Positions 8,879 to 55,975 of a stretch of 64,000 bases of DNA are shown piece by piece. The notes beneath the pieces are model-generated. The model was given only the letters and a program-made list of their open reading frames with translations. It was not told where the DNA came from and did no database searches. Location of the stretch: positions 682,001-746,000 of the forward strand of contig NW_020847569.1 of assembly GCF_003704095.1 (NCBI RefSeq). Direction: 5' to 3'. The translations under genes and the position numbers were made by a program. Source of the stretch: Pocillopora damicornis. Lineage: Eukaryota. Position 1 is the first letter of the stretch. Each line of letters opens with the position of its first letter.

Positions 8879-11800
8879 TCAGATGGCAATACTATTTGGA
8901 ATTCTCTCTGGCAAAAGATATGGGTACGGGACACGAAGTTTTGCGTTTCGCGCCTTAATTTCAGCGGATATGCCCTTCAGTTTCCTCTGAAATACTTCAA
9001 TGGCGGCTTTGGCAGGTTCTTCGATGAATAGCTCCTCTGGGTAGTCACCAATGAATTTCTGTCAATTAGAACAAATGATAAGTGGTTTTGAAGTAGTACG
9101 AACTACGATCGAAAAAACAAACATGTACTTGATAACATCAACTCTGCACTGATGGTTTTTGCATGATTTGTTGATGAAGCACGCATGCGTATCGATTGCC
9201 TGCTTTTCGAAATGTGTTCCGTTAACACTAAGTTCACTTTAAATCCTAGAGGTGACCTTAACTGGTACAAGAATAAAGGGGGGTAAGTTTCTAAAGAAAC
9301 TGCGGTGCTGCGTCGGTGGAGGAGTATAACAAGACAAATTGGTTTTATCAACTGAGTTGACAGTGTAAATTAGCCAGCGTAAGGAGTTTCTAAAGCTGAC
9401 TTTTCAAGCATTAGCCCTTTGTCAGAGCGAATTGACGATCGTGAATTGCTGAGGCTCTGGAAACTCTTTATGGTGGCCAAGTCACATTATTAACTCAGTT
9501 GATAAAACCAAATTACCTTAACTGGTACAACTGAAGACAATCACGAATTGAGCACAGAAGTTATGCATTACGGTACCTCGTCTTTAAAAATACGGGTCAA
9601 GTCGTACACTGTGGCAATGGTGAGGGAAGATTGGTGCTTGGTAGCCAAGCATTTCATGAGGTCTGCTTGCCCCACAACTCCTTTCTTGGTCGGTGGTGGC
9701 TGACGCATGAGTGCTGGAGAATTTGGCGGGAAACCGTATACGTCCATCTGGGAGAAGTTAACTGCTGCGTGTTGGCAGGCGCAGGTGAAGATGATGGAAG
9801 TCAAGAATTCGTACAGCTGGACGCAACTGGTAAAAGATGGCGGAACACCATGGTTTGTATGGCCTGGTTTATTGGGATAGCCATTGTCATGCAGATCTTT
9901 GACCCAATTCTGAAGCTCGTAGTCCTTTAATAAAAGTAACACGATGAGTTTTATTTGGATGGATTACAAGACACAGATTGCGAAAGGAAGAATAAATAGC
10001 CAAAGTGACAAAACAATATCCCGAGTTGACGGGATAATAAATTATGAGTGTTTGATTATCGCTGATTAACACTCTTCCAAAAAAAAAAGTGGATTTCAAC
10101 CTCAGTTCGAAAGGAGGCACGGAAAGGATAAGCTTAATCTACAGTCGTCCTTGATCAGGAGACCAACAAATGCAACTACTGTGCGCGGATTTAAATCATA
10201 TTTAGCAATTTTGATTTCATAAACCTTTACTTTTATTAACTCTCTGATATGGTTTAAGTAAAATCGTTAAGTGCGCAGGCACAAAAACAATACATTGCTG
10301 ACAACCTCTTATCTCCCAGAAGTGACTAACATGTAACCTCTCCCTATAATAACCATATACTATCCAACAAAAAGGTACTGGGAATATTCAACGTTATCAG
10401 GTAGAAGTTTTCATCTTGATCAAACATCAAATTCTCGTAACTAATTCACTAAGAAGTGTGCTCTTATCTCCCAGAAGTGACTAACATGTAACTTCTCCCT
10501 ATAATATTCATATACTATCCAACAAAAAGGTACTGAGAATATTCAACGTTATCAGGTAGAAGTTTTCATCTTGATCAAACATCAAATTCTCCTAACTAAT
10601 TCACAAAGAAATGTGTATGAGCAAGAGAGGAGAGTTTACAGTCAGATGTTGGGAGTTAAAGGGTAAAACTAACTCAACGTGACCGCGTTAGATTTGGTGT
10701 GGATTTTGCTGCAAGGAGATAGAGTGGCTTACTTTACCACTTCGTCGTAAAGACTTAGTAAAAGCTGTTTTTTTGACCTCCTTTGGTTCTTAGAATCTTG
10801 AGGAAACTGATTAACGTCTAAAAAAAGCCATCGAAAGCACTCTATATTTCTCCTTCTATGCTGCACAACGTGATGTAAGGTTGAGAGGAAGGACAACTCG
10901 AAAAGCTTCAGATTTTGTAAATTGGTCGGCTTTTTTGATCGTCATTTAACAACTTTTTTTAGTAATCATCCAACACCTTTTAGGATTATTAGACCGGTCT
11001 ATCGTTCGATTAAGTATTTGACTCATTACCTTCTGCACTTCACCATCTGAGTGGTAATAGCCAGATAGAATCTCCTTGACGAAGTCTGCTATGGCTGCCC
11101 AGAGTTTTAAAGAATCTTCGCGGTAGTGGAAGTTGGGTAGTTTTTCGGGATCATCCACCCCTCTGTCTTTTAGCACTTGTGGCAGGATATACGAGGGCCA
11201 GGTACTGCTGCTCTTGTAGAATTTCTTCATTAGGGTGACATGCCCTGGCAAAAGCAATTAGACACATGTGTAAAGCGCGATGACTCAATCAAGCTCAAAG
11301 TAACATGGGAGAGTAGATAAGAAAATCGTCAAAATTCATAAAGGTGCCCTGCAACTGGATTTGTCAAAAAATGTGGTAAATATCCTTATTTTTTACATGT
11401 GTAAGGGAGCAATTTAAACCAGACACTTGGTAATTTGACCTCCCGGGAGACAGATTGACGCTATGAGTTATCGTTTTACCTCCTCCGCCAACAGTCAAAG
11501 TGTTATCAGCCACTCCTCCCTCCGCTATCAAGACATCTCTGCCAAGAGTGTTGATGGCCAGAACTCCTCGGATATGAGGGGCCAACAATTTCCAAACGGG
11601 GTGGATTGTGGGTAGCTGTCTATAGCTGGCAACGGCAATGGGTTCCATGAAGAGATGGGTGCGGAGAAGATGGGTGACCATCTAAATACAACAGACACAG
11701 ATGACAGGAAAGTTTATTTTGTAAAAAAAGTGCATTTTTCAGGCATGGCTCTCGTGGTTCAGGGAACCTATCTTGCGTGTCCACGTATTATTTACCTTCT

Positions 11801-14750
11801 TTATTGCACCAAATTACGGAGTGTTTATTTTTCAAGTTCTTTACGGGTCGTCCCGGGAACTCAACGATCATAAGTCGAGCATGCACCAATGGATCACTTT
11901 ACAGCCGGCTGCGCCAATCTCCTGCGCAAAAATTTCAGGGGAAATTATATTGATACACCTTAATAAATCGACAAAGCTGAAATGGTAAGCTTCTTCTCAA
12001 GCCTGTTCTCCATTTCCTCTGCGATCCACATGTGGATAATTATCTATGCCTCTCACTCTATTTGAGGAGACAATCCGTGATGCTGAAAACGAATTAGTTT
12101 GTTTTCACATAGCTTCTTCAGGGTAACGTCTCGCACGCAGGCAAGAATTCACGCTGTCTCAGTTAATTAGGCGGGTTTCAAAGTAGCGCACAAAATAAAC
12201 AAAGTATTAAGGACAGTTTGAATTGACCATTACGGGAGGTGAACGAATGGAAATGATAAAAATAAGTTGATTTGAATCTCACGAAATCTCTATAGATTCT
12301 CCATGTTGATGCCGTCTCGTACCTGATGGAATTGAGTGTCAGAGTTACGCAGCCACAGCTTAGCACAGGTCCAGTCCATCTCGGAATCATTTGGGGTCCA
12401 TATAGGGTTTTCATGGTGTGGTTCTTGATGGAACTGAACTGCTATCGGCACCAGGTCTCCGTTACCTTTCACATAAAACAGGCCTAGGCTTGCGCACATG
12501 TATCTCCTTTCTAGGTCCGGTCGGTTCTGCCCGTAGTGCGGGATGTCCTCCAAGATCTTATAATCCACCATGTAAATACGGCCATCCTATGTGATGACAC
12601 CAAGAATCTTTTTCAATACTTACATGAGACAATGAAATGAGATATCCTCGTGAAATTCTTAATTATTTTGGGCATTAAAAAAGAGACCGCATAAACGTCA
12701 ACCTTTCCACAATCAAATAGTGCTATTTCTTAAATGTGCAATGTTTCTATTCACAAAAAGAACTTATTTACCGCCATGGTTTTCAAATACCGTTATCTCT
12801 TACGTGTGCAATATTTCTATTCACAAAAAGGACTTATTTACCGCCATGGCTTTCTTTAAACTGTCCCCACTGTCCAGCAGGTTACCAACCAACTCCTGTG
12901 TGACAGGAAAGTGGGGTGGCAGTTTTGTGCACCTCATGATTGAATCAGGATTACAGCCATTGAGAAACTGGTATCCAAAGAAACGGTCCTCTTTCCAGTA
13001 TTTTGCAGCTAGTGGAACCTCTCCAACAAAGCCAGTGAATGCCTATTTAAATAAATGTAGAATTTTTACAAATATATCAGACTATCAAATCAGTATGAAA
13101 TCACTTGGCACTTAATAATCATTCTGCAATAATCTGATAGAATTGACCGAACCATTTCAGAACTCAGAACAGAACAGAACCGAAAAAAAGTGTCTCTAAA
13201 AATCGGAAGTGTCAATCGGCAAACCTTGCAGTAGTCATCAAAGTCGTCCCACTGGTCAAAAAAATTCAACAAGTGCACAAGACCCAGGTTGATGAGTGCG
13301 TTTTTCCTGGCTCGATGAAGGTCATAGGCAGCTTCCTCGGTAAACTGCACGTCCTTGGGAAGATTCTTCACTCCAGATGCTTTCACGTAGCCTGGCAGAT
13401 CCTCATACACCTCATCTTTACCCCACTCATACAGTGCCCTCCTCTCCTTAAGCTCGGCTTCACGTCGACTTTTCAATTCAGGATGTTGCTCATCCGTGGG
13501 CAGTTTAGCTGAAATAGAAACGCAGTGGCATTAGGGGCCATCCATATAAACTGGTCGACTATGCCACATTCTTCTATAGAAATGTGAATCTTGCGCCAGG
13601 GTTGGGGAGGAGCGCACCCCCCCACCCCTTCCTTGAGATGACCAGTGGCTTTCTTATACAACAAGTATTGTGCGAAAAGAAAATGGAAAAAGAAAACTAT
13701 GTGATTTATTGGCGTTGAAGTAAAACATGAGATGAATTTAAAGAATTTATGTCAAACGCCCTAAACGTTTCGAGCATTAGCCCTACTTTTCGTCATAATA
13801 GACGTCAGTTACTTCATTCCTTAGTAGTGCACCCCCTCCTAAGAAGAAGAATCTCGGCTCCGCCCCTGTGCGCATGTTCGACGCGCTGTTTAGCAAAGAA
13901 GCTTGCGAGAGAGACCAGGTTATGGCTGTCTTACCTTTTCCTTCAAAGAAAGTGACTTCACTCTCTACCCAACGATTGCAAGGAAAAACATAGGTGACAT
14001 TCTTAGTTTTGATTGTTACTCGGTCGACGAACCAATCACTTCTGTACCCGCCGCCATCATTTTTTAGAGTGATCATCAAAAGCTCGCCAACATCCTTGGC
14101 GGTTATGTAGTAGTCGTCCTTCTGTCCGGCTTCAAAGTCATTATGGAACCATTTGTCCATAGACAGAGGGTTTGTTTCGCCGTTGCTACCTGAGATGAAA
14201 TTTTAAAGGCATTTTGCGAGGTTTTAAGTAGAAATTGGGGTCATTCATTTCACAAATGTTCACGGCCGCTCAGTTTGAAAAAATTAAAAATGATTTTGCA
14301 GAATTTGCCCTCATTTCTTAGCTTCCACGAGGACAACCATTCCGACGAGGCGTGCAGCTTTCAGGTCCTATTTATCCAAGGTATTCACTACGGTTGAAAA
14401 TCTCAAACGTAAACATTTCATTGTTGAACTTGCCTTCATAACGGAGGGAAAAGGTTCACAAATAAGGAAATCTACTGAAGTTAAAATGGTCGCAGAGAAT
14501 CTAAAGATTGTACCTCCCCACCAGAGGTCTAAATTGACTCGACGCCTCAAAATTTGGGTTCTCGTGTAAATGCCAAGCGCCAAGATTCAAAAAGTCCATA
14601 AGGTTTCTTAGGTAGTATATTTCGATGGAGAAATTTGACGAGAGAAAGATGTTAGGGTGAGTTACCTTTGATTATAAGAGACACTGATGCATCTGTACCA
14701 GCTCCTTTGCGGTTTCCCGTAACGACAGTGATTATATATTCTGACGTCAT
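8879..14750 (-). CDS. Stand-alone arachidonate lipoxygenase (PLAT + LOX domain), predicted R-specific, coral 8R-LOX-like
   Basis: Starts [23 protein letters not shown] (ATG 14750). PLAT motif DKWFHNDFEAG, then [29 protein letters not shown] (Gly at the Coffa site), QHAAVNFSQ and C-terminal LLPERIPNSIAI* (stop 8879-8881). About 9 exons with GT-AG boundaries. No catalase-like exons recognised upstream. Confidence 0.92.
9277..9430 (-). mobile_element. Degenerate copy of the 63628 repeat family in the last LOX intron
   Basis: Reverse complement of the same consensus (ggggtaagtttctaaagaaactg.ggtgctgcgtcggtgg). Confidence 0.75.
10308..10665. repeat. MITE-family copy with an internal ~155-bp tandem duplication
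   Basis: The unit ctcttatctcccagaagtgactaacatgtaac...ctaattcac occurs at ~10306-10460 and again at ~10461-10615 with few mismatches. Confidence 0.8.
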
Positions 14751-16722: not shown

Positions 16723-16822
16723 NNNNNNNNNNNNNNNNNNNNNNNNNNNNNNNNNNNNNNNNNNNNNNNNNNNNNNNNNNNNNNNNNNNNNNNNNNNNNN
16801 NNNNNNNNNNNNNNNNNNNNNN
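16723..16822. other. Assembly gap (100 N)
   Basis: Run of N; true length unknown. Confidence 1.
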
Positions 16823-18371: not shown

Positions 18372-18480
18372 TGGAATTTAGCTTTTCTCACTTTTTCAAC
18401 GAACCCTATTATTTATTGTTGGAAGTGATAAATATCCGATGCACCATTATAGACATTCTCTAATACGTATTCTAGCGCAG
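18372..18480 (+). pseudogene. Second, more decayed GPCR TM7 remnant
   Basis: WNLAFLTFSTNPIIYCWK followed immediately by stops; resembles the 21.6 kb remnant. Confidence 0.5.
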
Positions 18481-21078: not shown

Positions 21079-21178
21079 NNNNNNNNNNNNNNNNNNNNNN
21101 NNNNNNNNNNNNNNNNNNNNNNNNNNNNNNNNNNNNNNNNNNNNNNNNNNNNNNNNNNNNNNNNNNNNNNNNNNNNNN
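21079..21178. other. Assembly gap (100 N)
   Basis: Run of N; true length unknown. Confidence 1.
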
Positions 21179-22952: not shown

Positions 22953-22995
22953 GACTGACAATTTCTAGTGACTGACAATTTCTAGTGACTGACAA
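22953..22995. repeat. 17-bp tandem repeat, ~2.5 copies
   Basis: gactgacaatttctagt repeated. Confidence 0.85.
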
Positions 22996-23897: not shown

Positions 23898-26800
23898 CTA
23901 GATAGCGATGCTGTTTGGTATTTTCTCCGGAAGCAAATAAGTATAAGGAAACTTTAACTTCTCATTCCTTTTCTTTATTGACGCCGAAATTCTCTGAAGT
24001 TTTCCTTGGAAGCGCAAGATGGCCTCTCTGGCAGCCATGTCAGTGAAGGAGCTATCAGGGTAATCACCAAGGAAACGCTTGGAGGTAAGAAAAGAATATC
24101 TACAATCAGCGTCAAAATTGGTTGACACATCATGTTTGAATGTTTGAAGGGAAATACCAGGATTTGTTAAAGAATATCAAGGTTATAACTTACCTCATCG
24201 GGAGAAATTCGAGTCAGATCGTTCACCGTCGCTATAGCAACTCCTGCCTGGTGCTTGGTGGGAAGAGTCTTCATTATGTCTTTCATGGTCACTGTGCCCT
24301 TTTCCTTTGGAGGCGGCTGTCTCATGAGGCCTGGCGAATTTGGCGGGAAACCGAGCACGTCCATCTGCGAGAAGTTTACAGCTGCATGTTGACAAGAGCA
24401 AGTAAAGATAACAATAGTTAGTATGTGAGCCAGCTGCTCAGCGCTTGCAATAGACGATGGGAAGCCATGGTCCGTCTCTCCTTCGCGGACAGTGTAGCCA
24501 TTGTCATGAATGTCGAGGATCCACGCCTGGAGTTCTGTATCCTGGCAGAGAGAAAAGTCACCGTTGAGTAATGATAAATTCTTGAATATGCATTTCGCGA
24601 TTTCCTGGTTTTCCAGATAAAACACTTCTCACCTTTTGAATAACCTCATCTAATGGGTAATAGATGGATACAATCCTTGTGACGAAATTCTTGATGGCCT
24701 GCCATAGTCGCAAGGCATCATCACGATAGTGGAACCCAGGTAGTTTGTCTGGATCGTCCACTCCTCTCTCCTTTAAGACATTTGGCAGGTCATACGACGA
24801 CCACTTCATGTTCTTGTAGTACTTTTTCATGAGATCAATATGACCTACAATGGACATTAAACTGAGCGTTATGAAAACGAAGTAACCTTTTGGTATCCTC
24901 TGAAATCATCACAAACTTTTTCGTACAAGTTGCTGCATGAACGGATGAAGAGATCTGGTTTACAAATATACATTGCCGAATAAAAATCTTCCAATGATAA
25001 CGAAACAAAAAACAATGTTAAAAGCTTTAAATATTGGACAGCTCATCCGAAATGTAACATGAATGGTAAAGTAAAGGACTCTTAAAAGCCGTCTTAACAA
25101 AGGTTTCGTCAAAAAGGTGTGCGATACGTTGAATTTTTGGGGCGTAAATATTCATTCAGGAAGTTAGGAGTTCTGGCAATATCCACAGACGGAGCTCCCT
25201 TACCTCCACCTCCTATACTAAGAGTTTGATCCACTACACCTCCAGCTGCAATGAGCCTAGCTCTCCCAAGGGTATTGATGGCCATAACTCCCTTCAAATG
25301 AGGGACCAATAGTTTCCACAGTGGGTGAAGAGAGGGAAGTTGTCTCCAGCTGGCGAGAGCGAGTGGCTCCATGAAGAAATGAGTGCGAAGAAGATGCGCA
25401 ATCGTCTAAAGAGAACGTAAAGGAAGGGGTGTTGGGCAAAATCAATTGGCAGGGGAAGGGAGGGGATAGTAACAGAAATCCTTACCATCTTTAGTGTTAA
25501 AAATCGTAAGTATGGTATTTACAATCATCATCATCATCCTAACAGATCGCTGGAATAGTTTATATCTGTGCATTAAGAGACGCAACGCTAACCAAATAGA
25601 ATCTATGCGGAGAGGTAATGTATCCACCTATTCTGGATTTCTATAGTTGAGATCCTTAACTTGAAAACTTACTTGATGCCACTGCATGTCAGCATTACGC
25701 AGCCACATCTTGGCGTAGGTCCAGTCCAATTCAGAGTCATTAGGGGTCCATAATGGGTTGGTCACGTCAGGTCCCTGGTGAAGCTGAATTGCGATGGGAA
25801 CCATATCTCCAGTGCCCTTGACATAGAACAAACCCATCGCCGCACACGTATAGCGCGTCTCTAAGTTTTCATCTAAGAATCCATAAGATAGGATGCCATC
25901 AAGAATGCTGAAGTCGACCATATAAACACGCCCGTCCTTATTGAAAATAATTTAAAAATGAATAATTAGGAAGAAAACAACAGAGCTTTGCACGAGCTAT
26001 GAACATGAAAAGGTTATATTCGATCAAATAGCCTGTAATAATAATAACAATAATAATTGACCACTCCCCAAATGGGACTTTCAGGGCCAATACAAAAAAA
26101 TTGTAAATAAACACAGGGTTAAAAAATTCCAACTGGCGGGAGACAGACCAGTTGGCTATAGACAAGGCGTAGCCACGAAGTTGAGCTCAGGCAACCTAAA
26201 ACAAATCCGGTGGGTAACAGGGTGAAGGGCATCAAACCGGGACCACCAGGTTACTAGCCCAGCGCCCCAACCACTCGGCCACATTGCTTCTTTAGTAAAT
26301 CAGTCATACGCATGTGTGATTATTCGATCGTTCGATCGTGCATTTGGTCTATCGGTCGTTATTTTTTCTCGTCGTCCCTAAGTTTCGTCGTCAGTCTTCT
26401 GGTCACACAGTCACTTCGTGAGTCTGTCGGTTCGATCATCCATGGACGCAAATGAACAGTTCCGAACAGTTTCATGTGTAGGTATATTTACCTTCATTGC
26501 TTTCTCCAGATTGTCATCAACATCAAGAAGGTTTCCAACCAATTGCTGTGTCACGGGAAAGTTGTAAGGTAGTTCCGTACATCGCTTGATCGTTTCAGGG
26601 TTACAGCCATTCAGGAACTGTGCCCCGTAGAAGCAGTCATCCTGCCAGTGGTCGGCAGCCATTGGAACATCACCAACGAAAGAAACAAACGCCTGCAACA
26701 AAATGGACTGCTGTAGATTTCCTTGTTAAGGTAGCACAACTCACTTATTTTCCCATCAAATGCACAACCTTCATGCATAAACGTTTTCACCTAAAATGTT

Positions 26801-32525: not shown

Positions 32526-32556
<31 letters not shown>

Positions 32557-38300: not shown

Positions 38301-41300
38301 CTGCCGTTCGTCAATCCGTTCAAATCAATTGAAAAAAAACACTTACTTTCATTGCTTTCTCTAATGTATCACCCTCATCAAGAAGGTTGCCAATCAGCTC
38401 TTGTGTGACGGGGAAGCTAGGGGGGAGTTCAGTACATCGTTTGATTGTATCAGGGTTGCAGCCATTCAGGAACTGCGCTCCGTAGAAGTTGTCTTCCTGC
38501 CAATGGTCGGCGGCTTGTGGAACATCACCAACAAAAGCGACAAACGCCTAGATAAAAGTCGACCTCCCGCTAATCAATCGAATTTCACATGTAACACGTT
38601 TAAAATTCTAGTCTAAAACACGAAGAGAATTTTATTATTGGTTTTCGTATAAGATCTCGCATTACTTTTTATTAATATTATGCCAGATTAAAGAGTAATT
38701 ACTGAAATATACGGACTTAAAGATTAACAGAACCTCCCGCGGGTGTCTCTTTACAGTTAGATAAAAAGGAAATGCTTAGAAATCTCTTTGACGATGAATC
38801 CGACTTTGAATTGTATCATGCCTAAACCTACCTTACGGTAATCATCAAAGTCTTCCCAAGAATCGAAGATATTCCATAATTTTATCAAGCCAAGGTTTAT
38901 TAGAGCTTTCTGTCTGGCTGTGTGAAGGTCGTCGGCGGCTTCAGTGGTAAACTGGACATCTTTAGGTAGTTTTTTCCAATTTTCAGACTTGACATATCCA
39001 GGTAAACAGTGAAATACAGGATCGTCTCCCCACTGGAACAGTTCTTGTCTCTGTTGAATTTCAATTCGTCTTTGGTTTTGCACTGCTTCATGCTGCTTCT
39101 CTGTGACAAGTAACGCTGAAGTAGATTAAACAACACCAACCATAAGGAATTGTGATATATATTTGTTGTATTCTAGAGTAATAGGTATTTTATTTAATCG
39201 CAAGAGTTGCAGCGCACGAAGAGCGCTTAACTAGGTATCGAGTTATGCCATAAACGATGATTGTGCCCCGTCAAAGTCAGAGTGGTAAGTGTGATTGTGA
39301 TATGATATTTGTAATTCCCTTTTCGTTTATCCGTCTATAATACGATTAGGGATCCTCATCATGTTATACCACGTGTCTACGCAAAGATCTGTTTGATCGA
39401 GTAAAACAACTAAGTTGCAAACAACTTAACAACTAAGTTGCAATTTGCAGAAAATACCTTCCGCGAATACCTCATGCAAAGAAAAAATCGACAATACACT
39501 CCAAATTTCTACTTTTCTTTAGGGCCGTTAAGGTTTGTAATAACCTCCAAGGGATGAAGCCTTGAAAGATAAATGTAGAGAAACACCCAAGAAAAAAATT
39601 ATATTGAGACAGTTTTTGGCTAGAGATGATAAGAAGGGTTGAAAATATAGAAATTCTTGAAAACTTGAGTTTTCATTCTTGACAAGCATGGCCCTCGGCG
39701 AAGCTCCTTTGAAGTTGCAGTTGTCCCAAATTTACCGAAAAATCTCAGCGATATCGTTGTCAAAGTTATCCTTTCATACAACCCTGAACAACATGGTTGC
39801 TTCCATCAACACTTACCTTTTCCTTCGAAGAAGACGGATTCACTCTGTACCCACTGAAAGCAAGGGAATTCATAAAGCCTCTGGGGATCTTGGCTACAGG
39901 TAATCATGATTTTCTCCACAAACCAGTCACTTAACAATCCACTTTGATCATTGTGTAGTTTAATCATTAAAAGCTCCCCAACATCTTCTGCAGCAAGGAG
40001 ATAAGTATCTTCTTTTCCAGCTTCAAGATCGTCATGGAGCAATTTGTCCATCAAAAGAGGTCTTGTTCTTCCTTTGGTTCCTTGGAAAACGTTTTTTTAA
40101 AAAAAGCTATTATTGCAGTAATCATAGACATTTTACCATTCTAAATATCAAACGTTAGTTCATCTTTGCCTTCAGAGAGGGTGAACTCTGAATTGTAAAG
40201 TATTTTTCCATTGCATAACCGTGACAATAGATTTAATGTGAAGAAAGTGCAATGTTTGAATTCAGTCTTACCTGTGATGGTGAGGGTTACATCGGCGTTG
40301 GTACCAGCATATTTTCGATCGCCAGTGAAAACTGAGATGCAGTAAATGGACATATCTTCCCCGGTTTTCGAAGGTCGCCGCAGATTCAATTTATTGCTTG
40401 AGCCAGATTGTACTTTTAATTTCAAGTACGCCGAGGAATTGTAGTCGTAGATAGTCTTGGCTGGTGGCACTGACAAAGATGAGGGCATATTTTCTAACGA
40501 AGAGCGTGTTGATTCAGTTACGTCTAATGGTATAAGTGAAGTCAACTTGACGTTAGCTAAGTCCAACCAAGGGTGAGTGACTTGGTCCCAGACTCTAGAC
40601 GCGTGGAGAACAAGATGTGAGTCCTCGGGTTGTATTTCATGTAGTTGTATTTGAAGTTTGTATTGAATACCACCGTCTGACATGCGCTCTTCAAATTCAG
40701 AAGTTAGATAATCTTTAGGTCTCCTATCGCCCTCCCAACGGAATGTTTCCCTACAGAAAAGAGAGGAGAAGTAAGCTAAGAAATGATTGATTCTCTTGTT
40801 TAAAGTTAGCCGAGCTCTGATTCATTCGTTCCAGTACAAGCTTCTAAGACTGATTGATAATGACCATACATCACACTTTTTAGTATGATTACAAAGAATG
40901 GACAACAGGTCCTACCAAGGTTTTCTTTGCTCTTCTTCTGTAATAAGTCCAGTTTCTTCTCTATCATCAGAAGGGACGAGGCGAAATTTGGCGTAGCGAG
41001 GCACACCGTCTTTCGCTTTGTATTCAAACGCCATCCACGAGTAATACCGCTGATCAGTAAATGAGTTAGGAGCTCGACGAAATGCAGCAATGGTCAAATA
41101 GAAGCTGTATTTGTAAAAACAGAAAAAATTAACTTTCTAAATTCCATTTGACCAACTCTTTGTCTTTTTGTGTTACTGGCTTAGCAGCCGGCGTCGTAAG
41201 CATTCTGAAAACAATTTTGGGTTATTATACTTTTGGGTCATCAGTGTTTTCACATATTTTACATTGATTGTACTTACTGCCAAGGATCCTCCGCACAATA

Positions 41301-42619
41301 GGTCTCAAATGCTTTTATGTCTCCATTCAACGCACTAAGCATCTTGTCTAAGCTATAAAGGCTCCAATATGCAGCCTCTTCGCCAGTATACAAAAACAGA
41401 TCGAAAGGTGATTCAAAGTCACTGTCGGCAAACTTGAGAGTCGTTAATCTGATGTCCAATTCGGCATCGTCCATCTTAACGAGATTACAGTGACGGAGAC
41501 GGACTGGAAACACCCTTTCTGCAGAAAAAAATTCGTGGGCAGGGAGGAGTGGGTTGTTTAGGACTGTTACAACCCCAGATGCACCTACACCTCTCGTCTG
41601 TTGTGTAACAAGTGACCTGAGAACAAAGCCGGCTTGAAACTTTTTTACATAAAGTGCTAATTGTGACGCACTGAACGGTCCAGCTTCTGGTGGAGGCTGT
41701 AAAGGGAAGCAAAAACACGACATCAGTCATGCTTACAAATCACGGTTATATTTGGAGAGGCCTTAAACACGAACAACATAAGAAGGTCGGTAAATCTAAC
41801 ATCCTGTAGTTGATTATAGAAAAACATGCTATTTTTCTTGCAAAGAACGTGCGGCACTGTTGATCCTAGCTGTATGCAGCTGCAGGGCATGTATCACATT
41901 TAAACTTAGTAATGGTTTAACTCATCAAAGAGTTCTGTGTAGTTAAACGGTCACGCATCGCAACGCGGAAACCGCAGGTGCGGGGTTCTATTCCTTAAGA
42001 GAAGTCAGATTTGTTCCTTATCCCACTCCCGTCATGACCGTGACAAGACGGATAACCTTTTGCTGTAGTCTTCAATACTGGTGTTTAGTGTTTTGGATAA
42101 TGTATGGGGAAAAGATTTCGATGAAACAACAAAAAATACAATAGCGAGAACAAAAACGACAAAAAATTAAACAGAGGGTAACCCTAGACGAAAATCGTTT
42201 CTAATTTTGATAACGATGATGGCGATTATGAATTATGAGGGTGACGTTAGCGATTGCGTTACCGAGACAAAAGCAATATTGGTTATGAAATTTTGATGAA
42301 AATTCTATGAAAAAGTTCTTCACCTCGTCTGCCTCTGCCATCTTTTTTTCAAACAATTCCACTCCCATTGATTCCTTAAATATCTTGAATCCCATATTCT
42401 TCCCTGTTGAAATACACATACAACTCCCAAAATTAGTTCAAATCGTTTACACTGGAAATAATAACATTTAGAGACAGCAAGAGAGGATAAATATGCTCTC
42501 TTTGAGACAGTTTTTTTTCTCTACTTACATGGTTCTCGTTCTTCGCTTACTTCAATCGTCGGCCTCTTAATAGTTCCAATTACTTTGTTCTTCTTCCTCT
42601 TTGAAGGAATAATCCCCAT
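35366..42619 (-). CDS. AOS-LOX-type fusion, copy B: catalase-like domain lacking heme His/Tyr + PLAT + LOX with Ala at the Coffa site
   Basis: ATG 42619, MGIIPSKRKKNK...; same exon structure as copy A. LOX motifs [27 protein letters not shown] and PERIPNSIAI*. Confidence 0.92.
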
Positions 42620-47468: not shown

Positions 47469-50400
47469 CTAAATGGCTATACTGTTTGGTGTTCTCTCTG
47501 GCAGCAGATATTCGTAAGGGACCTCTAACCGTTTATTTCTTTCCTTTATTGCGCTGGAAATCTCATTGAGCTTTCCTTGAAAGCGTAGAATTGCTTCCAA
47601 TGCAGCGTTGTCGGTGAATAGGCCGTCCGTATAGTCACCAAGGAAACGCTTGGGGAGAAAAAAAACGGATGATTTTTTAGTAAGGGAAGGTAGGAAGAGT
47701 TATCCATAAGTCAGCACGTCAGCTTTGTCCGATAAAGAGGTCGATGAGACTTTTAGTCTCCCTCCGACCAGGAAGATAAATGGGTTCCAAGGGTCGTTAA
47801 CTGTGAGTTAAACCCTTTAAAATGCTGGGGGTGACCTTTGATTGACATGCCTCATCTTATCCTAGTCTCGTGGCAACTCCTAATTGTTTCTTGAAGCTAC
47901 CGTAACCTGAACAATCTTTGGTAACAGTGAGTCTCGTGTTCAAACTTGAATTCAACCAATATCTAGCACCATTCACAATAATGGATACTTAAATATGTCG
48001 CATTTTGATCAATTTGGCTATCTTCCCCACATCCCCTGGTCATATTTTTTGTATCAGGCTGACCTGAATTAAAATTACCTCGTCTGGAAAGATGCGTGTC
48101 AAATCATACACTGTTGCTATGGTTACTCCCGCCTGATGCTTTGTTGGTAAACATTTCATGACATCTTTTATGGTTACAACTCCCTTCCTTGTGGGAGGCG
48201 GCTGTCGCATCAGAGCGGGAGCGTTTGGCGGGAAACCAAAAGTATCCATTTGAGAAAAATTCACAGCCGCGTGTTGGCACGAGCAGGTGAAGATTATGAT
48301 AGTCAGCAGATGTGTCAGCTCTGGGATGCTTTTAACCGATACAGGGAAGCCATGACATTTCTCCCCGTTACGCACAGGATAACCATTGTTGTGGAGATCC
48401 AGAATCCACGCTTGGAGCTCTGTGTCCTGTGAAGAGTTGTTAAACCATTATTTCAAAAGACCTGGTTGAAACAGTTGGAATCGTTGCTTTTGCATTAATA
48501 TCAAGATCTGTAAGATATATTCGCTGAGAATTAATGGCTGACGATGCACCAATAAGCTATATCCCAACGAGCAACGACTCTCAGATACACGAGTCGTCTA
48601 GAACTTCTTAGTGTTTAGAGTGGATATGTTTGCATGCGGTTTTAAGAAAATTGCTTAAAGATATATGAAGGATGAGTACGTCCAGGGTTTTAACCTAATG
48701 ACGTACAAGAAGAACACTGGAATATAAAGAGCATTCCCGAGAACTTTTTTTTTAACCTCAGAGGGACACTGGGATGTAACACAAACACAATACTTGCCAT
48801 TTCAATGTCATGATCAGAATGGTAGTAAACTGATAGAATGTCTTTGATGAAATCGCCGATGGCCTGCCACAGACGTAAGGCGTCGTCTCGATAGTGGAAG
48901 CCAGGAAGCTTATTTGCATCAAAAACCCCTCTCTCTTTTAACACTTTGGGAAGGTCATACGATAACCAGCTTAAGCTTTTGTAATACTTCTTCATAAGAG
49001 CTATGTGACCTGGGGATAAGAAGACACCATGCACTGTAAAATAAATAATCTTTAAATTTCCTCAGCTAAAGAGTAGCCTCATCCACGTCTATAAAGCAAA
49101 ACTGGCGATCATACACTGCACTCATTTAGTCTTTGGCCACTATCCTTTTGTATGGCATTAAGGCAAAAGACTGGACGCAACCTGGTTGAGTGGTATGAAC
49201 CCTGAATAGAAAAGCCAGAATTCCACTGGTCTTCCTCTCTCCAATTTAAGGGTTAACACCCATAATATTTTCATTTAAATATGTTTCATTGATTTGCTCT
49301 TCTGCGCCAGTCCCAGTACTAAGAACACCATTGAGGGAAAATAGATCCTAAATTTTTGTAACCATGTACACTTCAACCACTTTTTACGTATAAATATCAT
49401 ACTTGTGAACTGCGGTTTTAGAAATGAAAATGTAAGCGATCTTCGCAGTGATGAACATTACTTAAGCAGTAATAAAACTAACGCCTGAAAAAAATTCAGA
49501 AGATCTGAAAAAAAAATTCTCAAAAATAATTTTAATATATTCACAGTCATTGATTCATCACTTCGCGGGTGTACTACGAACCAACATAAAAAGCAGCTCC
49601 TAGTTGGTAGTGCACCGCACCGGTATCGCAGAGGTCATGGGTTCACATCTCGTACAAGCCTGAATTTTTTCAGGCATTATTTTCACTACTGCTTCAGTAA
49701 TGTTTACGAAGGTCGTTTTCATATTTAATGTGCACTTCATTGGCCTTACCTCCACCACCCAGGCTAAGCGTGTTGTCCGCCACACCTCCGGCAGGAATAA
49801 GTCTCTCTCTTCCAAGCGTGTTGATGGCCAGAACTCCTCTCACGTGAGGGGACAATAATTTCCACAAGGGGTGGAGTGCTGGCAATTGCCTCCTGCTGGC
49901 AAGAGCGACAGGCTCCATGAAAAGATGAGTACGAAGTAGATGGGTTATCATCTGTTAATGCAAAGGAAATTTCGATCAAATTCTATAAGAAATATCGAGA
50001 GAAATATTGATACATTGATTCAAAAGGGTAGTATTGTCTTGCTAGGATTCGAAATACAGGACTGACATTTTAAGACTTACTTGATGCCATTGTGAGTCAG
50101 CATTGCGAAGCCACATTTTGGCGTAGGTCCAGTCTAGCTCAGAATCATTTGGGGTCCATATTGGGTTTGTCTCACTTGGCTCTTGATGGAACTGAATTGC
50201 TATTGGCACTACATCCCCACTACCTCGAACATAGAACAAACCTAAAGATGCAGACGTGTAGCGCCTTTCTAGTTTTGAATCGTTTTGGCCATAATGTGGA
50301 ATGTCGTCAAGAATCTCGTAATCTACCATGTACACACGGCCATCCTGAAAATGATACAGTGATAAAAGCCTTTATTTAATGTTCCATACAAACAACTCTT

Positions 50401-53400
50401 ATTGCCGACATCTTCCTCGGAAAGTAATTGTTCCTCTCTAGAAAAGGGATAGTTTTCTGGTGAATTGCAAGCTAGAGTGAGAAATGCTCTCAAAAAATCC
50501 ATTGGAGTATATAATTCAATTTGTTTATTTTGCTTCCGGATCCTCTTAGAAAGGTTTTTTTTTCCGACACCACAAAATTAAATTTTAGTTGGGGAAGCCT
50601 TTGGTCATTCAACAATTTGCAATTGAGTGCATGTCAAAAGTGATCCGTGATTGCTTTGGTTTTACTTAACCCTGCTCTGTGATTGGTCCAGAAGACTTGC
50701 GCCATCCTTTCAACCTATAAGATGTAAAACTAAAAACTTGATAACTCACGTTTTTCCGCACTTCAAGCAATTTGCTTCTTTTCACTCTTAGGTCCCATTG
50801 GCTAATGATGATGAAACCTTTGTTATGATTGGTTGAGGGAATTACTTTTCGATTAAGTGACAGGTATAGGGACACTCAATTGAAAACTGCTGTACTTCTC
50901 TACGTTACAGATGTTTACTGTCTTGTTCCCCCTAAAAGTTCCTGAGTTCTTGACATTTATCTAGATATTTGGTACTAACGATCGAATTTGATACTCAATG
51001 AAGAGTAGAGATCCGTACCTTTATTGCGTTTTGCAGTGTATCACCCGCATCTAGGAGATTGCCAACCAACTCTTGTGTCACGGGAAAGTTGGAGGGAAGT
51101 TTTGAGCATCGCATGATCGTGTCAGGATTGCAGCCGTTAAGGAACTGTGCTCCGTAGAAACGGTCATCTTGCCAGCGCTTGGAGGCCAGAGGAACCTCTC
51201 CAACAAAAGAGACGAACGCCTACAAAGTAGTGTTTGTTAGCATCTGAAAATGAGAATGTTCAAGATCTGAAATTGGGCATCAATTCTGTAGTGTTAATCT
51301 GTTACCTTCTTGAAATCATGAAAATCTTCCCACGACTCAAGCATGTTCAGCAATTTAACCAGCCCTAGGTTGATTAACGCTTTTCGCTTTGCCTGGTAGA
51401 GGTCATCGATTGCTTCTTCTGTAAATCGTACGTCTTTTGGAAGTGTCCTCACGCTCTCGGATTTGATAAACCCTGGAAATCCGTCAAAATTGGGATCATC
51501 TCCCCACTGGTATATTTCTAGCCGCTTTTGAACCTCTAGGCGTCGTTGCTTTTTCAGTACCTCGTGTTGTTCATCTGTTATCAACTTTGCTAAAAGGGAC
51601 AAAATTGCACATCATGAAAGTTAGTTTTAAATTGTCTCATGAGAAAAGAAAGGGATGAGTCAAGATGAATTTCACCTTTAGAAATTCGTGCATAACTCTA
51701 AATCTTTGGCTTCTTCGTGTGGACTATCCAGCTATTTTGAAATTACAAAAAGGACAAAAGTTCACCGGTATTTAGGGAAGCTCAACTAAGTTGTAGCACA
51801 CGTTGTCAATGCAAAGTGACGCAAATGCAATTGCAACTCTGTAATTGCCGATACAAAAGTTACTTTATACAACAACTCTCCAGTAACAAAGACCCAACCG
51901 ACCATGTAAAGTCTGGTCATTTAGCTTTTCTTTCGCATGAAGAATTTTAATTCTGACCATACGCTTTGGGCTCCGCTCAGTCGTGTGACACTTATGCAGA
52001 AGAAAGTAGTCTTCTACCTACCTTTCCCTTCAAAGAAAACTGCCTCTTGCTGCACCCATCCGTAGCATGGAAATTCGTAAACTGTTTGACTGTTTGAGCT
52101 GCAATTGATCTCAACCTTGTCAACGAACCAATCACTGGAGCGATGGAATCCGACACCCTGGTTATTCTCGAGTTTTATAATTAAAGGCTCGCCAACATCC
52201 TCTGCATTAATGATGTAAGTGTCTTCCTGTCCTTTCTGAAAGTTATTGCGATACCATTTTTCTAGGGTAACTGGCTTTGTTCTTCCCTTAGTCCCTAGAA
52301 ACAGATTTGGTCTTTAGCCCAAGTACCTTAATGTGACCTTCTTTTCTAAGAATCCTTAAGGTATAAAGCAGCTAAAATAAATAGCCCGTTGTAAACTGAC
52401 TCGTTATTGGTATAGGGACATTATCCTGACAATAAAATTAAAGAATGAAATCATAGGACTACTTTGTTATTTGACACTACTGGTATCAGTAACAGTCAAC
52501 TCGTTACGGTGATACGCTACGTGTAAAATCCTTTTAGTGTTGCAGACATTACACGTAGAGAGCTTCCGAAAATAAGAATGAAGAGAAGAAGAATTTTGAG
52601 GAAGACCCATGCTTTAGACAACTTTGCAATCGATTAAGGCCGCTATACCATCAATCATGGTTTTCACTGGCGACCCGCACACAAATGCTAAAGTATTTAT
52701 TTCCCAGAATAATAACACTGAGGAGACTCAGTAAGGTTAAGTGCAAAGACAAATGATTTGAATTGCCTTGTATGGTTTTTGCTGGTTGTCATGTTATTGT
52801 TATTGATCATGCCGATATATTCCACGGTTAAGAAAAGAATGAGAGATAATGTTGTGCATGATTGCGCTTGTATTTGCGGGGCAAATGAAAACGTATTGCT
52901 GCCATCTTGTACATCGTACTTTTGGAAGGCTTACCTGTAATCGTCAAAGCAACTTTTGCATCAGTTCCTGCTCCCTTACGATTTCCTGTTTTCACCTTGA
53001 CGCAATAACTCACTTCGGATAGCATCTGCTCTCTCGATACCTTTTTACGAGGCCTGTTTGAACTCATCATATTCGATGTGGGATAAATTTTCGACCTCAA
53101 GTAAGCAATGGAGTTGTAGTCGTAAATTGTGTCAGCAGGAGGAATGCCCAGCGATAGGGGGCGATGTTCCAATGAATAACGAGTGCGCTCTACTATCTCT
53201 ATTGGCAACACTGACGTAAGAGTGACATCAGCAAGATCCAACCAGGGATGTGTTTTTTGATCCCAAGCCCTGGCTGCGTGCAAAATTAGATGTGAGTCAT
53301 CCGGTTTTATTTCGTGCAGTTGTATTTGAAGCTTGTATTTTACTTCCCCTTCAGCAATCTGATTCATGAATTCTGGGATTAAGTAACTCTCGGGTCTCTT

Positions 53401-55975
53401 TTCGTCTTCCCATCTGGCAGGCACCCTAGAACGAAGGAAGTTTCGTCTGTTTAGAACGTCCCATTTGGTTTTGATTGAGTACTTTCTCGTGAACAATTCA
53501 TCTTGATTTTTCATCAAATTAGCAATAAAACAGACCAGCAGACAAAAACACACCAAATGATCAACAGAACAAGAGTACAAGAGACCGATACACCACCAAA
53601 TCAACGAACATAGTCCCAAGTGTTCCCTTAATTTCTTCCATGCTTTGTCTGAGAGGCTGCACCTCGAAGCATGCATATCATTAATAATACTCAATGTTAT
53701 ATGAAAAAAGGTAGTATAAACTTGTCATCGGCAAATCGGGCTGGGGAGAGTTGTTGCTGGACCTACAGTATTGACCATCTCGGCTGTTATCACTGCTATC
53801 TGATCATGAAACTCTCAAGCGATGATCATATCCTTGGACGATCATGGAAGGAAATTGTTAATACAAAAAAATTACCATGGTTTCCGTTGGTCGTATTCTG
53901 TCATCAAACCAGTCTCCTCTCTGTCATCTGCGGGAACGAGGCGAAATTTTGCGTAACGTGGTACACCATCTTTTGCTTTGTATTCAAACGCCATCCACGA
54001 GTAATACCGCTGATCAGTAAACGACTTAGGAGCTCGTCGGAAAACTGCTATGGCTAAGTGGAAGCTGAGATAAAGAGGCAAAGTTATTAGCCAGTTAAAA
54101 ACGTCTAAAGAGTCATTATAGGCATCTTGTAAGACATTTTTTTCTTTATATAATTTTACAGAGCGTAGTCTCTTTTACTGCACCTTTGAATGAGCATAAT
54201 TCCGTTTTCACTCTCCCATGAAATCGAGAACTGGTCGATTTAACCCGATTTATATCGTATGAAAGTCAATATTTTCCAATATAAACATGTTATAAAATAT
54301 AAATAAAAGTAAGATACACAAAAGCCTCTGAGCATTCTATGTCTGATATGTAATGTAATTTAAAAAAATTTTGACGGACTTACTTCCATGGATCCTCCAA
54401 GCAGAAAGCTTTGAATACTTTTGGACCCCCAGCCAATGCTGTCAACATTCTATCAAAACTAACTATGTTCCAAAAAGCAGCCTCTTCACCCGTATGCATC
54501 ATCAAATCGAACGGCGAGTCGAAATCATTGTCCGCAAACTTCAGAGACACCGCCCTTACGTCTAATTGAGTATCATCCGTTCGCACGAGGTTGGAATGGC
54601 GGAGGCGGACTGGGAATACGTGCCCCACTTTGAAGAATTCGTGCTCGGGAAGAAGAGGGTTTTCTACCACTGTTACGGTTCCTATAGCCCCAACACCTTT
54701 AGCGTGGGTCCCACGTTGACGAGTAATCAGAGTTTTTAAGGCGAAACGGGTTTTGTACTTTTTGACGTATCGAGCCATTTGTGATGCACTGAGGGGTCCA
54801 GGCTCAGGTGGAGGCTAATAAAAACACATAAAATTAAGTCGTTATTAAAGTTGGGATATATTACCGTATAACGACAAAGAAAGAACCCTTCGTCTACTTT
54901 GTTGGAGCAGTCTGCAAATCAATTTATGCAAGAGATCATAATCTCTTAATTAAGGCTGATAACTGACTTCAGCCGCTGTTTCAAGACGTCACTAGCTGCA
55001 AGAGAAAATCTCTTCAATATCTTTTTCAACAAATAGTGTTTAGTTTATTTGCCCCTGTTTGCTATCATTTGTCAATGTTCTGTCTCCTTTAGTTTGTCCA
55101 CACCTTATGCCAACACCTGTTTTATTTTAAGCCGACACCGCCAAAATCCTTTTTCTAAAATACACTTTTACATAAGAGAAATCCAAATGAAGTCTAACTT
55201 TTTATTTTGGGTTAGCAGCCTTGGCTCTAAATAGAAGCCCCTGGTCGGAAAGTACTATATAAGCCGACCAATCAGCGACGGAGTAGAGCTATTTCATTTA
55301 AAGTCACGGATTACAAAGAGACAGCCTGCACCCCGTGGCTATTTGAAGATTTTTTCATCAAGGTGTCCCGAAATTTCAGTTTGCATTGTTTTCTATGGAT
55401 AATACACTGCTGGGTTCGCCTGTGGGAATTAACATTTTCCCTGATCTTGAATGCATCAGAAATAGACATACCTCGTCGGCCTCTTTCATTTTCTTGAAAT
55501 ATAACTCATCTCCCATTCTTTCTCGGTAAAGTTTAAATCCCATGTTTTCCCCTATGGATTCAAAACACAAGATTGTTATGAACTCAACATTCCACATCCT
55601 GTGCTCCCACTTGAAGCCGGAATATATTATCATTTTCGTCGACTCACCAACATTCTTCTAAGATCATAAATTTAACCGCTTTTCAGGATCGCGCCGAGTC
55701 TCTCTCCATTCTTACAGTGGCTGGAAAGAGAGAGATCCTGACGACCAGTACGGACAAGCCTGAGGCAAATAGGCCCTCTGTTGTAGAAGCCTAGATACCT
55801 CTAACCCGTCCAAAAACTCGGAGAAACTATCAGCTCTACGACTTTTAAAACTTATATTCAGGCTAAGTGACTCTAAGTTATACTCACATTCGGTAAGTTC
55901 TTCTCTGCTTCCAACAATTGATTTTTTCGTGAAGCCGTGTATCACCTTGAGTTTCTTTGAATTTACTCCTCCCAT
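47469..55975 (-). CDS. AOS/HPL-LOX fusion, copy C: catalase-like heme domain with His and Tyr intact + PLAT + LOX
   Basis: Exon 1 (55975-55888) [10 protein letters not shown]...ELTE splices (phase 1) to WENMGFK. Distal motif RGTH (His 54704-54706), RLRHSN, and proximal LRSKIY (Tyr 53083-53085). LOX motifs [27 protein letters not shown] and [10 protein letters not shown] (stop 47469-47471). Confidence 0.93.
49420..49735. mobile_element. Second copy of the tRNA-arm foldback repeat, in an intron of copy C close to a splice donor
   Basis: gcgatcttcgcagt...cgcctgaaaaaaattcag and ctgaattttttcaggc arms; tagttggtagtgcaccgcaccggtatcgcagaggtcatgggttc. Confidence 0.65.

What the first reader, a model, noticed from the sequence alone, without database searches (positions are those of the whole stretch)
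8879..55975. A four-gene oxylipin cluster in which each paralog appears to have a different job
Seen: four co-oriented LOX genes with four different configurations. These are a free PLAT-LOX (Gly, R-type), a pseudo-catalase-LOX (Gly), a pseudo-catalase-LOX (Ala, S-type) and an intact heme-domain LOX (Gly, Phe150-type). Inference: a subfunctionalised oxylipin module. Three LOXs could supply differently positioned hydroperoxides, with a single heme domain converting them, which would give products not predictable from the 'AOS-LOX' annotation all three fusions would normally get.
Basis: inference. Interest (0 to 1): 0.75.

Follow-up and report, generated by a model that had tools for sequence, protein, structure and literature searches.

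The report
Four-gene coral lipoxygenase tandem array
A stony-coral genome carries four intact lipoxygenase genes in a row, two of which keep a catalase-like front domain that has lost its heme-binding residues, a variant already noted in the coral literature.

Summary
All four genes lie on the minus strand.

- **D (55975-47469, 1080 aa):** AOS-LOX fusion with Thr66-His67, Arg349 and Tyr353. It has His at position 137 and Phe at 150. Coffa residue is Gly.
- **C (42619-35366, 1070 aa) and B (31554-23898, 1072 aa):** fusions whose catalase-like domain lacks Thr66/His67 (4-residue deletion). Arg349 is Lys and Tyr353 is Gln. Coffa residue is Ala in C and Gly in B.
- **A (14750-8879, 677 aa):** PLAT-LOX only, Gly.

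All 44 introns sit at conserved positions. All iron ligands are present.

- **Transcription:** RNA contigs confirm 6 of 6 gene A introns laid, and polyA runs hold gene C.
- **Gaps:** both N gaps lie between A and B and touch no exon. However, A's transcripts start with an exon absent from the assembly.
- **Heme-less domain:** it is under purifying selection (dN/dS 0.17 against 0.14 for PLAT-LOX). It belongs to a well-supported clade of 15 exon-level sequences, all without Tyr353.
- **Prior literature:** Lohelaid and Samel (2018) already reported such stony-coral AOS-LOX sequences.
- **The 'single heme domain serving three LOXs' idea is not supported.** Three more AOS domains with Thr-His lie elsewhere in the genome. 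Only C differs at the stereocontrol site.
- **New details:** a myristoylation-like first exon in all three fusions, and a rare Gly form of C's Ala site.

The parts
47469..55975 (-). Gene D: AOS-LOX fusion, 13 exons, 1080 aa, with heme-type catalase-related domain
   Evidence: Model. Exon 2 matches PDB 1u5u at E 4.4e-31 and exon 4 matches 3dy5 at E 3.8e-35. There is a weak Pfam Catalase match (E 0.004, below cut-off) in exon 2 only.
55888..55975 (-). D first exon, begins Met-Gly-Gly-Val-Asn-Ser-Lys-Lys (myristoylation-like motif plus basic residues); phase-1 donor GTGAGT
   Evidence: Sequence read and model. Exon use is not checked by RNA.
54704..54709 (-). D codons for Thr66-His67 (distal heme pocket), present
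54494..54496 (-). D position 137: His instead of the Asn of octocoral cAOS
   Evidence: His is the commonest state here, in 10 of 18 aligned rows.
54455..54457 (-). D position 150: Phe (the state of Capnella cHPL; octocoral cAOS has Leu)
53083..53097 (-). D Arg349 to Tyr353 (proximal heme ligand), present
35366..42619 (-). Gene C: fusion with ligand-less catalase-like domain, 13 exons, 1070 aa, Coffa Ala
   Evidence: RNA runs hold 0.39-0.59 of the words of this stretch.
42529..42619 (-). C first exon, begins Met-Gly-Ile-Ile-Pro-Ser-Lys-Arg-Lys-Lys; donor GTAAGT, phase 1
41595..41600 (-). C: codons flanking the 4-residue deletion that removes Thr66-His67
40408..40422 (-). C: Lys at position 349 and Gln at position 353
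37164..37166 (-). C Coffa codon: Ala
   Evidence: The Ala form is on 202 public contigs and an otherwise identical Gly form on 4.
23898..31554 (-). Gene B: fusion with ligand-less catalase-like domain, 13 exons, 1072 aa, Coffa Gly (25265-25267)
   Evidence: It has the same deletion (30869-30874) and Lys349/Gln353 (28858-28872).
8879..14750 (-). Gene A: PLAT-LOX without AOS domain, 9 modelled exons, 677 aa, Coffa Gly (11541-11543); 5' exon missing from the assembly
   Evidence: Spliced RNA contigs in 4 of 4 runs confirm 6 of 6 introns laid. Contigs leave the reference at 14767/14768.
16723..16822 (.). Assembly gap in the A-B interval; possibly hides A's 5' exon; left unfilled
21079..21178 (.). 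Assembly gap in the A-B interval; touches no modelled exon

Best explanation
This is a tandem array made by gene duplication inside the cnidarian AOS-LOX/LOX family.

- **D** is a conventional two-step enzyme. A LOX domain makes a fatty-acid hydroperoxide, and a heme-bearing catalase-related domain can convert it. The product type (allene oxide or aldehyde) is open.
- **B and C** belong to an old stony-coral subfamily whose catalase-like domain lost its distal His and proximal Tyr, so it most likely binds no heme. The domain is kept by selection. These proteins most likely work as membrane-targeted lipoxygenases whose front domain has a non-catalytic role (scaffold, lipid binding or docking).
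- **A** is a lipoxygenase without that domain.
- **Stereochemistry:** C's Ala is predicted, by the Gly/Ala rule, to switch oxygenation stereochemistry and position. The other three are predicted R-type.

Shown here: gene structures, residues, selection, transcription of A and presence of C in RNA runs. Inferred: heme loss, product types and myristoylation.
For: - **Intact genes.** Four intact models with conserved introns.
- **LOX active sites.** Two His, then His and Asn, and a C-terminal Ile are present in 4 of 4 genes.
- **D keeps the AOS residues.** Thr66, His67, Arg349 and Tyr353 are present.
- **C and B lack all four**.
- **Selection.** For B against C, dN/dS is 0.173 over 348 codons of the AOS part and 0.138 over 679 codons of PLAT-LOX.
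- **Other public assemblies, proximal site.** Of 40 exon-4 rows, 17 lack Tyr353 (Gln 7, Leu 7, Met 1, Ser 1, Lys 1). Fifteen of those 17 form one clade with 100/99 support that contains B and C.
- **Other public assemblies, distal site.** It is lost in several ways: 5 rows with the deletion and 4 with substitutions, among 15 rows that cover it.
- **Transcription of A.** It is spliced as modelled in 4 of 4 runs from 3 studies.
- **Transcription of C.** Run X7 shows only exon bins on gene A. It holds 0.42 of gene C's words, close to the exon share of that stretch, about 0.44 by my own figure from the model.
- **Literature.** PMC5793058 reports stony-coral AOS-LOX with Thr66/His67 missing and Tyr353 replaced by Leu, forming a separate clade.
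Against: - Heme content, activity and products were not measured.
- Transcription of B and D, and use of the first exons of B, C and D, were not checked with reads (one read-laying run only).
- Word shares in RNA runs can include DNA or pre-mRNA. X1 and X3 also cover A's introns and upstream region at low depth.
- The Gly/Ala rule has exceptions (recalled).
- A's protein start is uncertain. The visible part of its missing 5' exon is open in the frame of the ATG.
- D has His at 137 and Phe at 150, so calling it an allene oxide synthase is itself unproven.
Confidence: 0.75

Rival explanations
1. A, B and C make differently placed hydroperoxides, and the single heme domain of D converts them in trans, giving products not predictable from annotation.
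For: - The four genes are adjacent and co-oriented.
- A and C are present in the same 4 RNA runs.
- All three fusions carry a similar membrane-targeting-like first exon. PLAT domains could bring them to one membrane.
Against: - Three more AOS domains with Thr-His lie elsewhere in the genome, beside LOX exons.
- Three of four LOX domains share Gly and nearly the same active-site motifs.
- The heme-less subfamily is widespread in other assemblies.
- Octocoral cAOS is described as acting on 8R-HpETE (PMC5617202 passages). Acceptance of other positional isomers is unshown.
Confidence: 0.1
2. The front domain of B and C still binds heme or another cofactor through other residues and catalyses a different reaction on hydroperoxides.
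For: - Purifying selection is as strong as on the LOX part.
- Core motifs of the fold are kept in all rows.
- His is present at position 137 in B.
Against: - Both axial-side residues are gone. There is no Pfam Catalase signal even at E 10, while D's exon 2 has a weak one.
- Position 353 varies (Gln, Leu, Met) inside the clade, as expected for a site released from constraint.
Confidence: 0.1
3. B and C are decaying copies on the way to pseudogenes.
For: Loss of catalytic residues of one domain.
Against: - Intact 13-exon frames and conserved splice sites.
- dN/dS of 0.14-0.17.
- Relatives of each lineage in other assemblies.
- Gene C words held in polyA RNA runs.
Confidence: 0.03

Closest known systems
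Plexaura homomalla AOS-LOX fusion protein (PDB 3DY5; domains 1U5U, 2FNQ, 3FG1)
   Same: - Same order: catalase-related domain, PLAT, LOX catalytic domain.
- D aligns over residues 30-155, 177-239 and 241-410 with Thr66, His67, Arg349 and Tyr353 kept.
- The LOX exon 11 of D, C and A matches at E 1e-36 to 1e-37.
   Different: - D has His137 and Phe150.
- B and C lack the four catalytic residues.
- All three window fusions have an extra first exon starting Met-Gly. Absence of such an exon in the octocoral protein is recalled, not tested.
Stony-coral AOS-LOX clade with altered AOS residues (Lohelaid and Samel 2018, PMC5793058; for example O. faveolata XP_020618715.1)
   Same: Thr66 and His67 are missing and Tyr353 is replaced. 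The paper says these sequences form a separate clade. B and C show the same pattern, and the Leu353 form also turns up in my exon-level hits.
   Different: - B and C have Gln353 and Lys349.
- The paper gives no gene order, selection test or function.
- I could not align their sequences. Full-length coral proteins were out of reach of the exon-sized searches, and the paper's supplement with the alignments is closed.
Capnella imbricata catalase-related hydroperoxide lyase-LOX (Teder et al. 2017, PMC5617202)
   Same: D has Phe at position 150, the cHPL state.
   Different: - The paper shows that cAOS L150F still makes AOS products, so Phe150 alone does not predict lyase activity.
- The 176-177 pair could not be placed with confidence.
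- Phe150 is the usual state in the stony-coral rows.
Gersemia fruticosa 11R-lipoxygenase (PDB 3VF1)
   Same: It is the best solved match to C's exon 9 (E 4.2e-27, against 2.6e-20 for 8R-LOX). It is about equal to 8R-LOX for exon 11.
   Different: It has no AOS domain, as in A. The window LOXs are about equally far from 8R- and 11R-LOX, so positional specificity cannot be read off.
Coffa-Brash Gly/Ala stereocontrol site of lipoxygenases
   Same: Gly in D, B and A, and Ala in C, at the residue aligned with the Gly of 8R-LOX and 11R-LOX.
   Different: The rule itself (Gly gives R, Ala gives S, with a shift of position) is recalled and cited in PMC5793058. No product was measured.

Membership tests
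Lipoxygenase (Pfam PF00305) | Profile match over the curated cut-off | tested here: met
   Two matches per gene, 49.5-68.2 bits against a cut-off of 23.6. ORF scans gave 66-75 bits.
Lipoxygenase (Pfam PF00305) | Iron ligands: two His in the His-x4-His motif, then His and Asn, and a C-terminal Ile | tested here: met
   The motifs are present in 4 of 4 models and all end in Ile.
Lipoxygenase (Pfam PF00305) | N-terminal PLAT domain | tested here: inconclusive
   Pfam PLAT scored 21.7 bits (cut-off 23) on the exon fragment of D and E 0.13. The start aligns with 3dy5 residues 373-410. Whole domains were not scanned because exons were searched apart.
Catalase-related allene oxide synthase (cAOS) | Sequence relationship to the solved cAOS domain | tested here: met
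   D matches at E 4.4e-31, 1e-09 and 1e-28 to 1u5u/3dy5. C and B are 62% identical to D over 389 positions.
Catalase-related allene oxide synthase (cAOS) | Distal Thr66-His67 | tested here: not met
   Met in D. Not met in C and B, where a 4-residue deletion removes them.
Catalase-related allene oxide synthase (cAOS) | Proximal Tyr353 with Arg349 | tested here: not met
   Met in D. C and B have Gln353 and Lys349.
Catalase-related allene oxide synthase (cAOS) | Distal Asn137 | tested here: not met
   D His, B His, C Tyr. The three other genomic copies have Gly, Gly and Ser.
Catalase-related allene oxide synthase (cAOS) | Heme content and conversion of 8R-HpETE to allene oxide | not testable with these tools
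   Needs purified protein.
AOS-LOX fusion protein | Both domains in one reading frame | tested here: met
   In D, C and B the AOS C-terminus, linker and PLAT start lie in a single exon, and the 13-exon frames are open. This is not met in A.
Catalase-related hydroperoxide lyase (cHPL) | Phe150 together with Tyr-Ser at 176-177 | tested here: inconclusive
   Phe150 is present in D. Positions 176-177 fall just outside the aligned stretch.
N-myristoylated proteins | Met-Gly start with a small residue at position 6 (pattern recalled) | tested here: met
   D starts Met-Gly-Gly-Val-Asn-Ser. C and B start Met-Gly-Ile-Ile-Pro-Ser. Each is followed by Lys/Arg. Use of the exon and the lipid itself were not tested.

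The most novel reading that the evidence does not exclude
The ligand-less catalase-like domain is a true pseudoenzyme module. Selection has kept it across stony corals because it gives N-myristoylated lipoxygenases a non-catalytic function, such as holding the hydroperoxide or substrate, or docking to a membrane or partner. In addition, gene C carries a natural Gly/Ala switch at the stereocontrol site, so near-identical corals would make oxylipins of opposite chirality and shifted position.
Probability: 0.3. Interest if true: 0.6.

Novelty: new member of a known kind. Interest (0 to 1): 0.4.

Why it matters
Annotation pipelines label all three fusions 'AOS-LOX'. Expression studies of coral stress, wounding and larval development quote that label (passages seen in PMC12019164 and PMC12960093).

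Two of the three fusions here almost certainly cannot do the AOS step. Oxylipin pathways inferred from such labels are therefore overstated.

The array also offers a clean natural set for enzymology:
- with heme ligands, without them, and without the domain;
- Gly against Ala at the stereocontrol site.

This set could show what a heme-less catalase fold does for a lipoxygenase.

Tried and rejected
- **Pfam Catalase over the whole assembly.** It found 12 matches, all on contig C2447 and none in the window. It does not see the AOS domains. Only D's exon 2 gives a sub-threshold match.
- **The big representative search.** It returned mainly exon-sized ORFs and distant full-length fusions. I fetched 31 of the 150 listed but did not need them for gene modelling, because the paralogs fixed the splice sites. 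I make no claim about which organisms the full-length hits come from.
- **Spliced evidence among the protein hits.** All 52 hits tested matched within exon 2 or exon 4 limits, apart from small overhangs and P0190, which ran about 20 residues past the end of exon 4. They are genomic ORFs, not cDNA.
- **A myristoylation-type first exon for A.** None was found in the readable 14784-23900.
- **ORFs between the genes and in the flanks.** Of 10 scanned, 9 had no Pfam family. One (1656-1949) matched glutathione synthase.
- **Repeats around the gaps.** One 63-nt tandem pair and one 69-nt inverted pair, neither informative.
- **Positional specificity from similarity to 8R-LOX against 11R-LOX.** Rejected, because the scores are nearly equal.
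- **Synteny in other corals.** The only hint is that hits of different types report the same longest-contig length: 1,443,702 for P0154, P0161 and P0191; 486,322 for P0156, P0174 and P0193. This suggests the same contig but does not prove it.
- **Search for print on myristoylation of coral AOS-LOX.** 0 papers held 'myristoyl', 'allene oxide synthase' and 'coral' together.
- **Supplements.** They are closed, so the supplementary alignments of PMC5793058 were not seen. They may list residues for more species.

Full report
**Setting**

The window is contig C4204:682001-746000 of a 234-Mb assembly in 4393 contigs. It has 39% G+C and two 100-N gaps, at 16723-16822 and 21079-21178. The relatives found are stony-coral sequences. 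One hit is named for Desmophyllum pertusum, and the RNA runs are labelled coral or marine metagenome. That the assembly size fits Pocillopora damicornis is my recollection, not a tool result.

**Observation**

Pfam Lipoxygenase matched 28 places in the assembly. Eight lie in the window, two per gene, all on the minus strand. Comparing all minus-strand ORFs with each other gave four sets of paralogous exons.

I chose splice sites by requiring the same position and phase in the paralogs. First exons were read directly from the sequence. The resulting models are:

| Gene | Coordinates | Exons | Length |
|---|---|---|---|
| D | 55975-47469 | 13 | 1080 aa |
| C | 42619-35366 | 13 | 1070 aa |
| B | 31554-23898 | 13 | 1072 aa |
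| A | 14750-8879 | 9 | 677 aa |

- None has an internal stop.
- Of the 44 introns, 43 are GT-AG and one is GC-AG (D, donor at 48797).
- The finding's end points are exactly A's stop and D's ATG.

**Domains and residues**

D's exons align to the solved Plexaura AOS domain and fusion protein (1u5u E 4.4e-31; 3dy5 E 3.8e-35 and 1e-09).

- **D:** Thr66, His67, Arg349 and Tyr353 are present. Position 137 is His rather than Asn, and position 150 is Phe.
- **C and B:** four residues including Thr66-His67 are missing. Position 349 is Lys and position 353 is Gln. Position 137 is Tyr in C and His in B. Position 150 is Leu.
- **Fusion:** in D, C and B the end of the AOS domain, the linker and the start of PLAT lie in one exon, so these are true fusions.
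- **A:** the homologous exon has a stop upstream in frame and an ATG at 14750.
- **Iron ligands:** present in all four.
- **Coffa residue:** Gly in D, B and A, and Ala in C. That Ala aligns with the Gly of 8R-LOX and of 11R-LOX.

**The gaps**

Both gaps lie between A's first modelled exon (14666-14750) and B's last exon (23898-24077). No reading frame crosses them.

- No AOS-like piece is found in the readable part of that interval (best E 0.17).
- All 164 local HSPs of the four models fall on the 48 exons.

RNA contigs laid on 10723-16722 (four runs from three studies) confirm 6 of 6 introns of gene A in that stretch. They also show something the assembly does not contain:

- In three runs the contigs leave the reference at 14767/14768, 17 nt before the ATG. 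They continue for 22 or 62 letters.
- Those letters are absent from the window and from the whole assembly at up to 3 mismatches.
- The 30 visible letters are open in the ATG frame. The junction is in phase 1, the same phase as the first-exon donors of B, C and D. A six-residue stretch resembles the end of D's first exon.
- Low-depth contigs cover 14734-16722 without a break, at depths like those over A's introns.

The simplest reading is that A has a short 5' exon in unassembled sequence, possibly in a gap. The contigs end within 62 letters, so an AOS domain upstream is unlikely but not excluded. The reference shows no AG directly before 14767, which I cannot explain.

**Is the heme-less domain alive?**

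B and C are 81% identical in the AOS part and 79% in PLAT-LOX. Nei-Gojobori estimates give dN/dS 0.173 over 348 codons for the AOS part and 0.138 over 679 codons for PLAT-LOX. The ligand-less domain is as constrained as the enzyme behind it.

Exon-level word searches found relatives in other public assemblies:

- **Exon 2** (11 hits, aligned with the window copies and 4 earlier hits, 18 rows). Of the 15 rows that cover the distal site:
  - 4 have Thr-His and 2 have Ala-His;
  - 5 have the deletion (C, B and three hits);
  - 4 have other replacements of His.
- **Exon 4** (38 hits plus 3 window copies; one fragment dropped, leaving 40 rows).
  - 23 rows keep Tyr353.
  - 17 do not: Gln 7, Leu 7, Met 1, Ser 1, Lys 1.
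- **Maximum-likelihood tree of those 40 rows**.
  - 15 of the 17 form one clade (support 100/99) that holds B and C.
  - D sits in a separate clade of 15 rows, all with Tyr (100/99).
  - The label needs two changes on the tree. The root is at the midpoint only.
  - Three rows have long branches.
- B and C each pair with their own near-identical sequence. In addition, P0175, which is 90% identical to B, groups with B rather than with C. The B/C duplication is therefore probably older than that divergence.

**What is already in print**

- **Lohelaid and Samel 2018** (PMC5793058; section 2.1 read in full).
  - They report stony-coral AOS-LOX sequences with Thr66 and His67 missing and Tyr353 replaced by Leu (O. 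faveolata).
  - They report others with Thr66 and Arg349 replaced (Acropora).
  - They say these form a separate clade, note Gly, Ala, Ile, Leu and Val at the Coffa site, and state that function is unknown and that sequence does not predict LOX specificity.
- **Teder et al. 2017** (PMC5617202; passages).
  - Phe150 is the state of Capnella cHPL and Leu150 that of cAOS.
  - cAOS L150F still makes AOS products.
  - 'Phe150-type' is therefore a correct observation without predictive force. Phe is also the usual state in the stony-coral rows.

**The module idea**

Three further AOS exon-2 copies lie on contigs C2496 (two) and C3860 (one). All three have Thr-His.

- Two of them lie beside LOX exons on the same strand: the C3860 copy and the C2496 copy at about 245 kb.
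- The other C2496 copy sits in a more tangled stretch with LOX exons on both strands.
- The C3860 LOX exon 11 carries one stop.

D is therefore not the only heme-type domain of this coral.

D's exon 11 is 69-76% identical to those of A, B and C but only 49-54% identical to the C2496 and C3860 copies. The four window genes are each other's closest relatives, which fits local duplication and, for A, loss of the AOS exons.

**The Ala of gene C**

Among 39 exon-9 rows, 34 have Gly, 4 have Ala and 1 has Val.

- The Ala form of C's exon is on 202 public contigs.
- A form identical except for Gly at that site is on 4 contigs.
- The next relative (88% identical) has Gly.

The Ala is real and common in the data, but young. 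I cannot tell whether the Gly form is an allele or a sister species.

**Transcription**

- Ten runs on record as RNA hold 0.39-0.59 of gene C's sampled words.
- Run X7 shows depth only in exon-bearing bins of gene A (15 of 30 bins). It holds 0.42 of C's words, close to the exon share of that stretch, about 0.44 by my own figure from the model.
- X1 and X3 also carry intron and upstream sequence at low depth, so their shares overstate mRNA.
- B and D were not tested.

**New details**

- All three fusions begin with a short extra exon coding Met-Gly, a Ser at position 6 and a run of Lys/Arg. This fits the myristoylation pattern as I recall it. The exon joins in phase 1 to form a Trp codon.
- One or two of the distant copies also have a Met-Gly-x-Cys start upstream.
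- I found no paper that combines these terms (0 papers).
- Exon use is inferred from conservation, not from reads.

**Verdict**

Two members belong to a ligand-less AOS-LOX subfamily that is already in print by sequence.

- evidence of purifying selection on the ligand-less domain;
- the breadth of the ligand-less clade;
- the missing 5' exon of A;
- the first-exon motif;
- the Gly/Ala variation in C.

The trans-acting 'single heme domain' model is not supported.

Noticed in passing
window 847-1949 (+), probably to about 7700: Exons of a eukaryotic glutathione synthase-like gene on the plus strand (Pfam GSH_synth_ATP, E 9e-13 and 1.4e-12). It converges on the 3' end of gene A.
   Followed up: partly
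window 14767-14770 (-): RNA contigs of three runs join an unassembled 5' exon to gene A at a point where the reference shows no AG acceptor. This could be an allele difference, an assembly error or a non-canonical site.
   Followed up: partly
window 15977-16010: Contigs of runs X6 and X7 (one of 1316 nt, depth 138) match only 22 nt here, with long unmatched ends on both sides. This is either a micro-exon of another transcript or a chance or repeat match.
   Followed up: no
G000:C2496:221000-246000 and G000:C3860:8300-13700 (loci L004-L013): A second set of AOS-LOX and LOX genes. It includes two AOS exon-2 copies with Thr-His on C2496, an inverted pair of identical LOX exon-9 copies (L010, L012), and a C3860 copy whose LOX exon 11 carries one stop.
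   Followed up: partly
L005 (G000:C2496:243185-246586), about 1.07 kb upstream of the AOS exon 2: An ORF starting Met-Gly-Ser-Cys-Val-Ser with a phase-1 GT donor. It suggests that a lipidated N-terminus may be general to the coral's AOS-LOX genes.
   Followed up: no
window 44732-45876: Two overlapping ORFs of 195 and 192 aa on opposite strands between genes D and C, with no Pfam family.
   Followed up: no
genes B and C, AOS part against PLAT-LOX part: Synonymous divergence between B and C is lower in the AOS part (0.54) than in PLAT-LOX (0.85). This could reflect gene conversion.
   Followed up: no
window 20474-20599: Two tandem copies of a 63-nt unit (94% alike) in the A-B interval.
   Followed up: no
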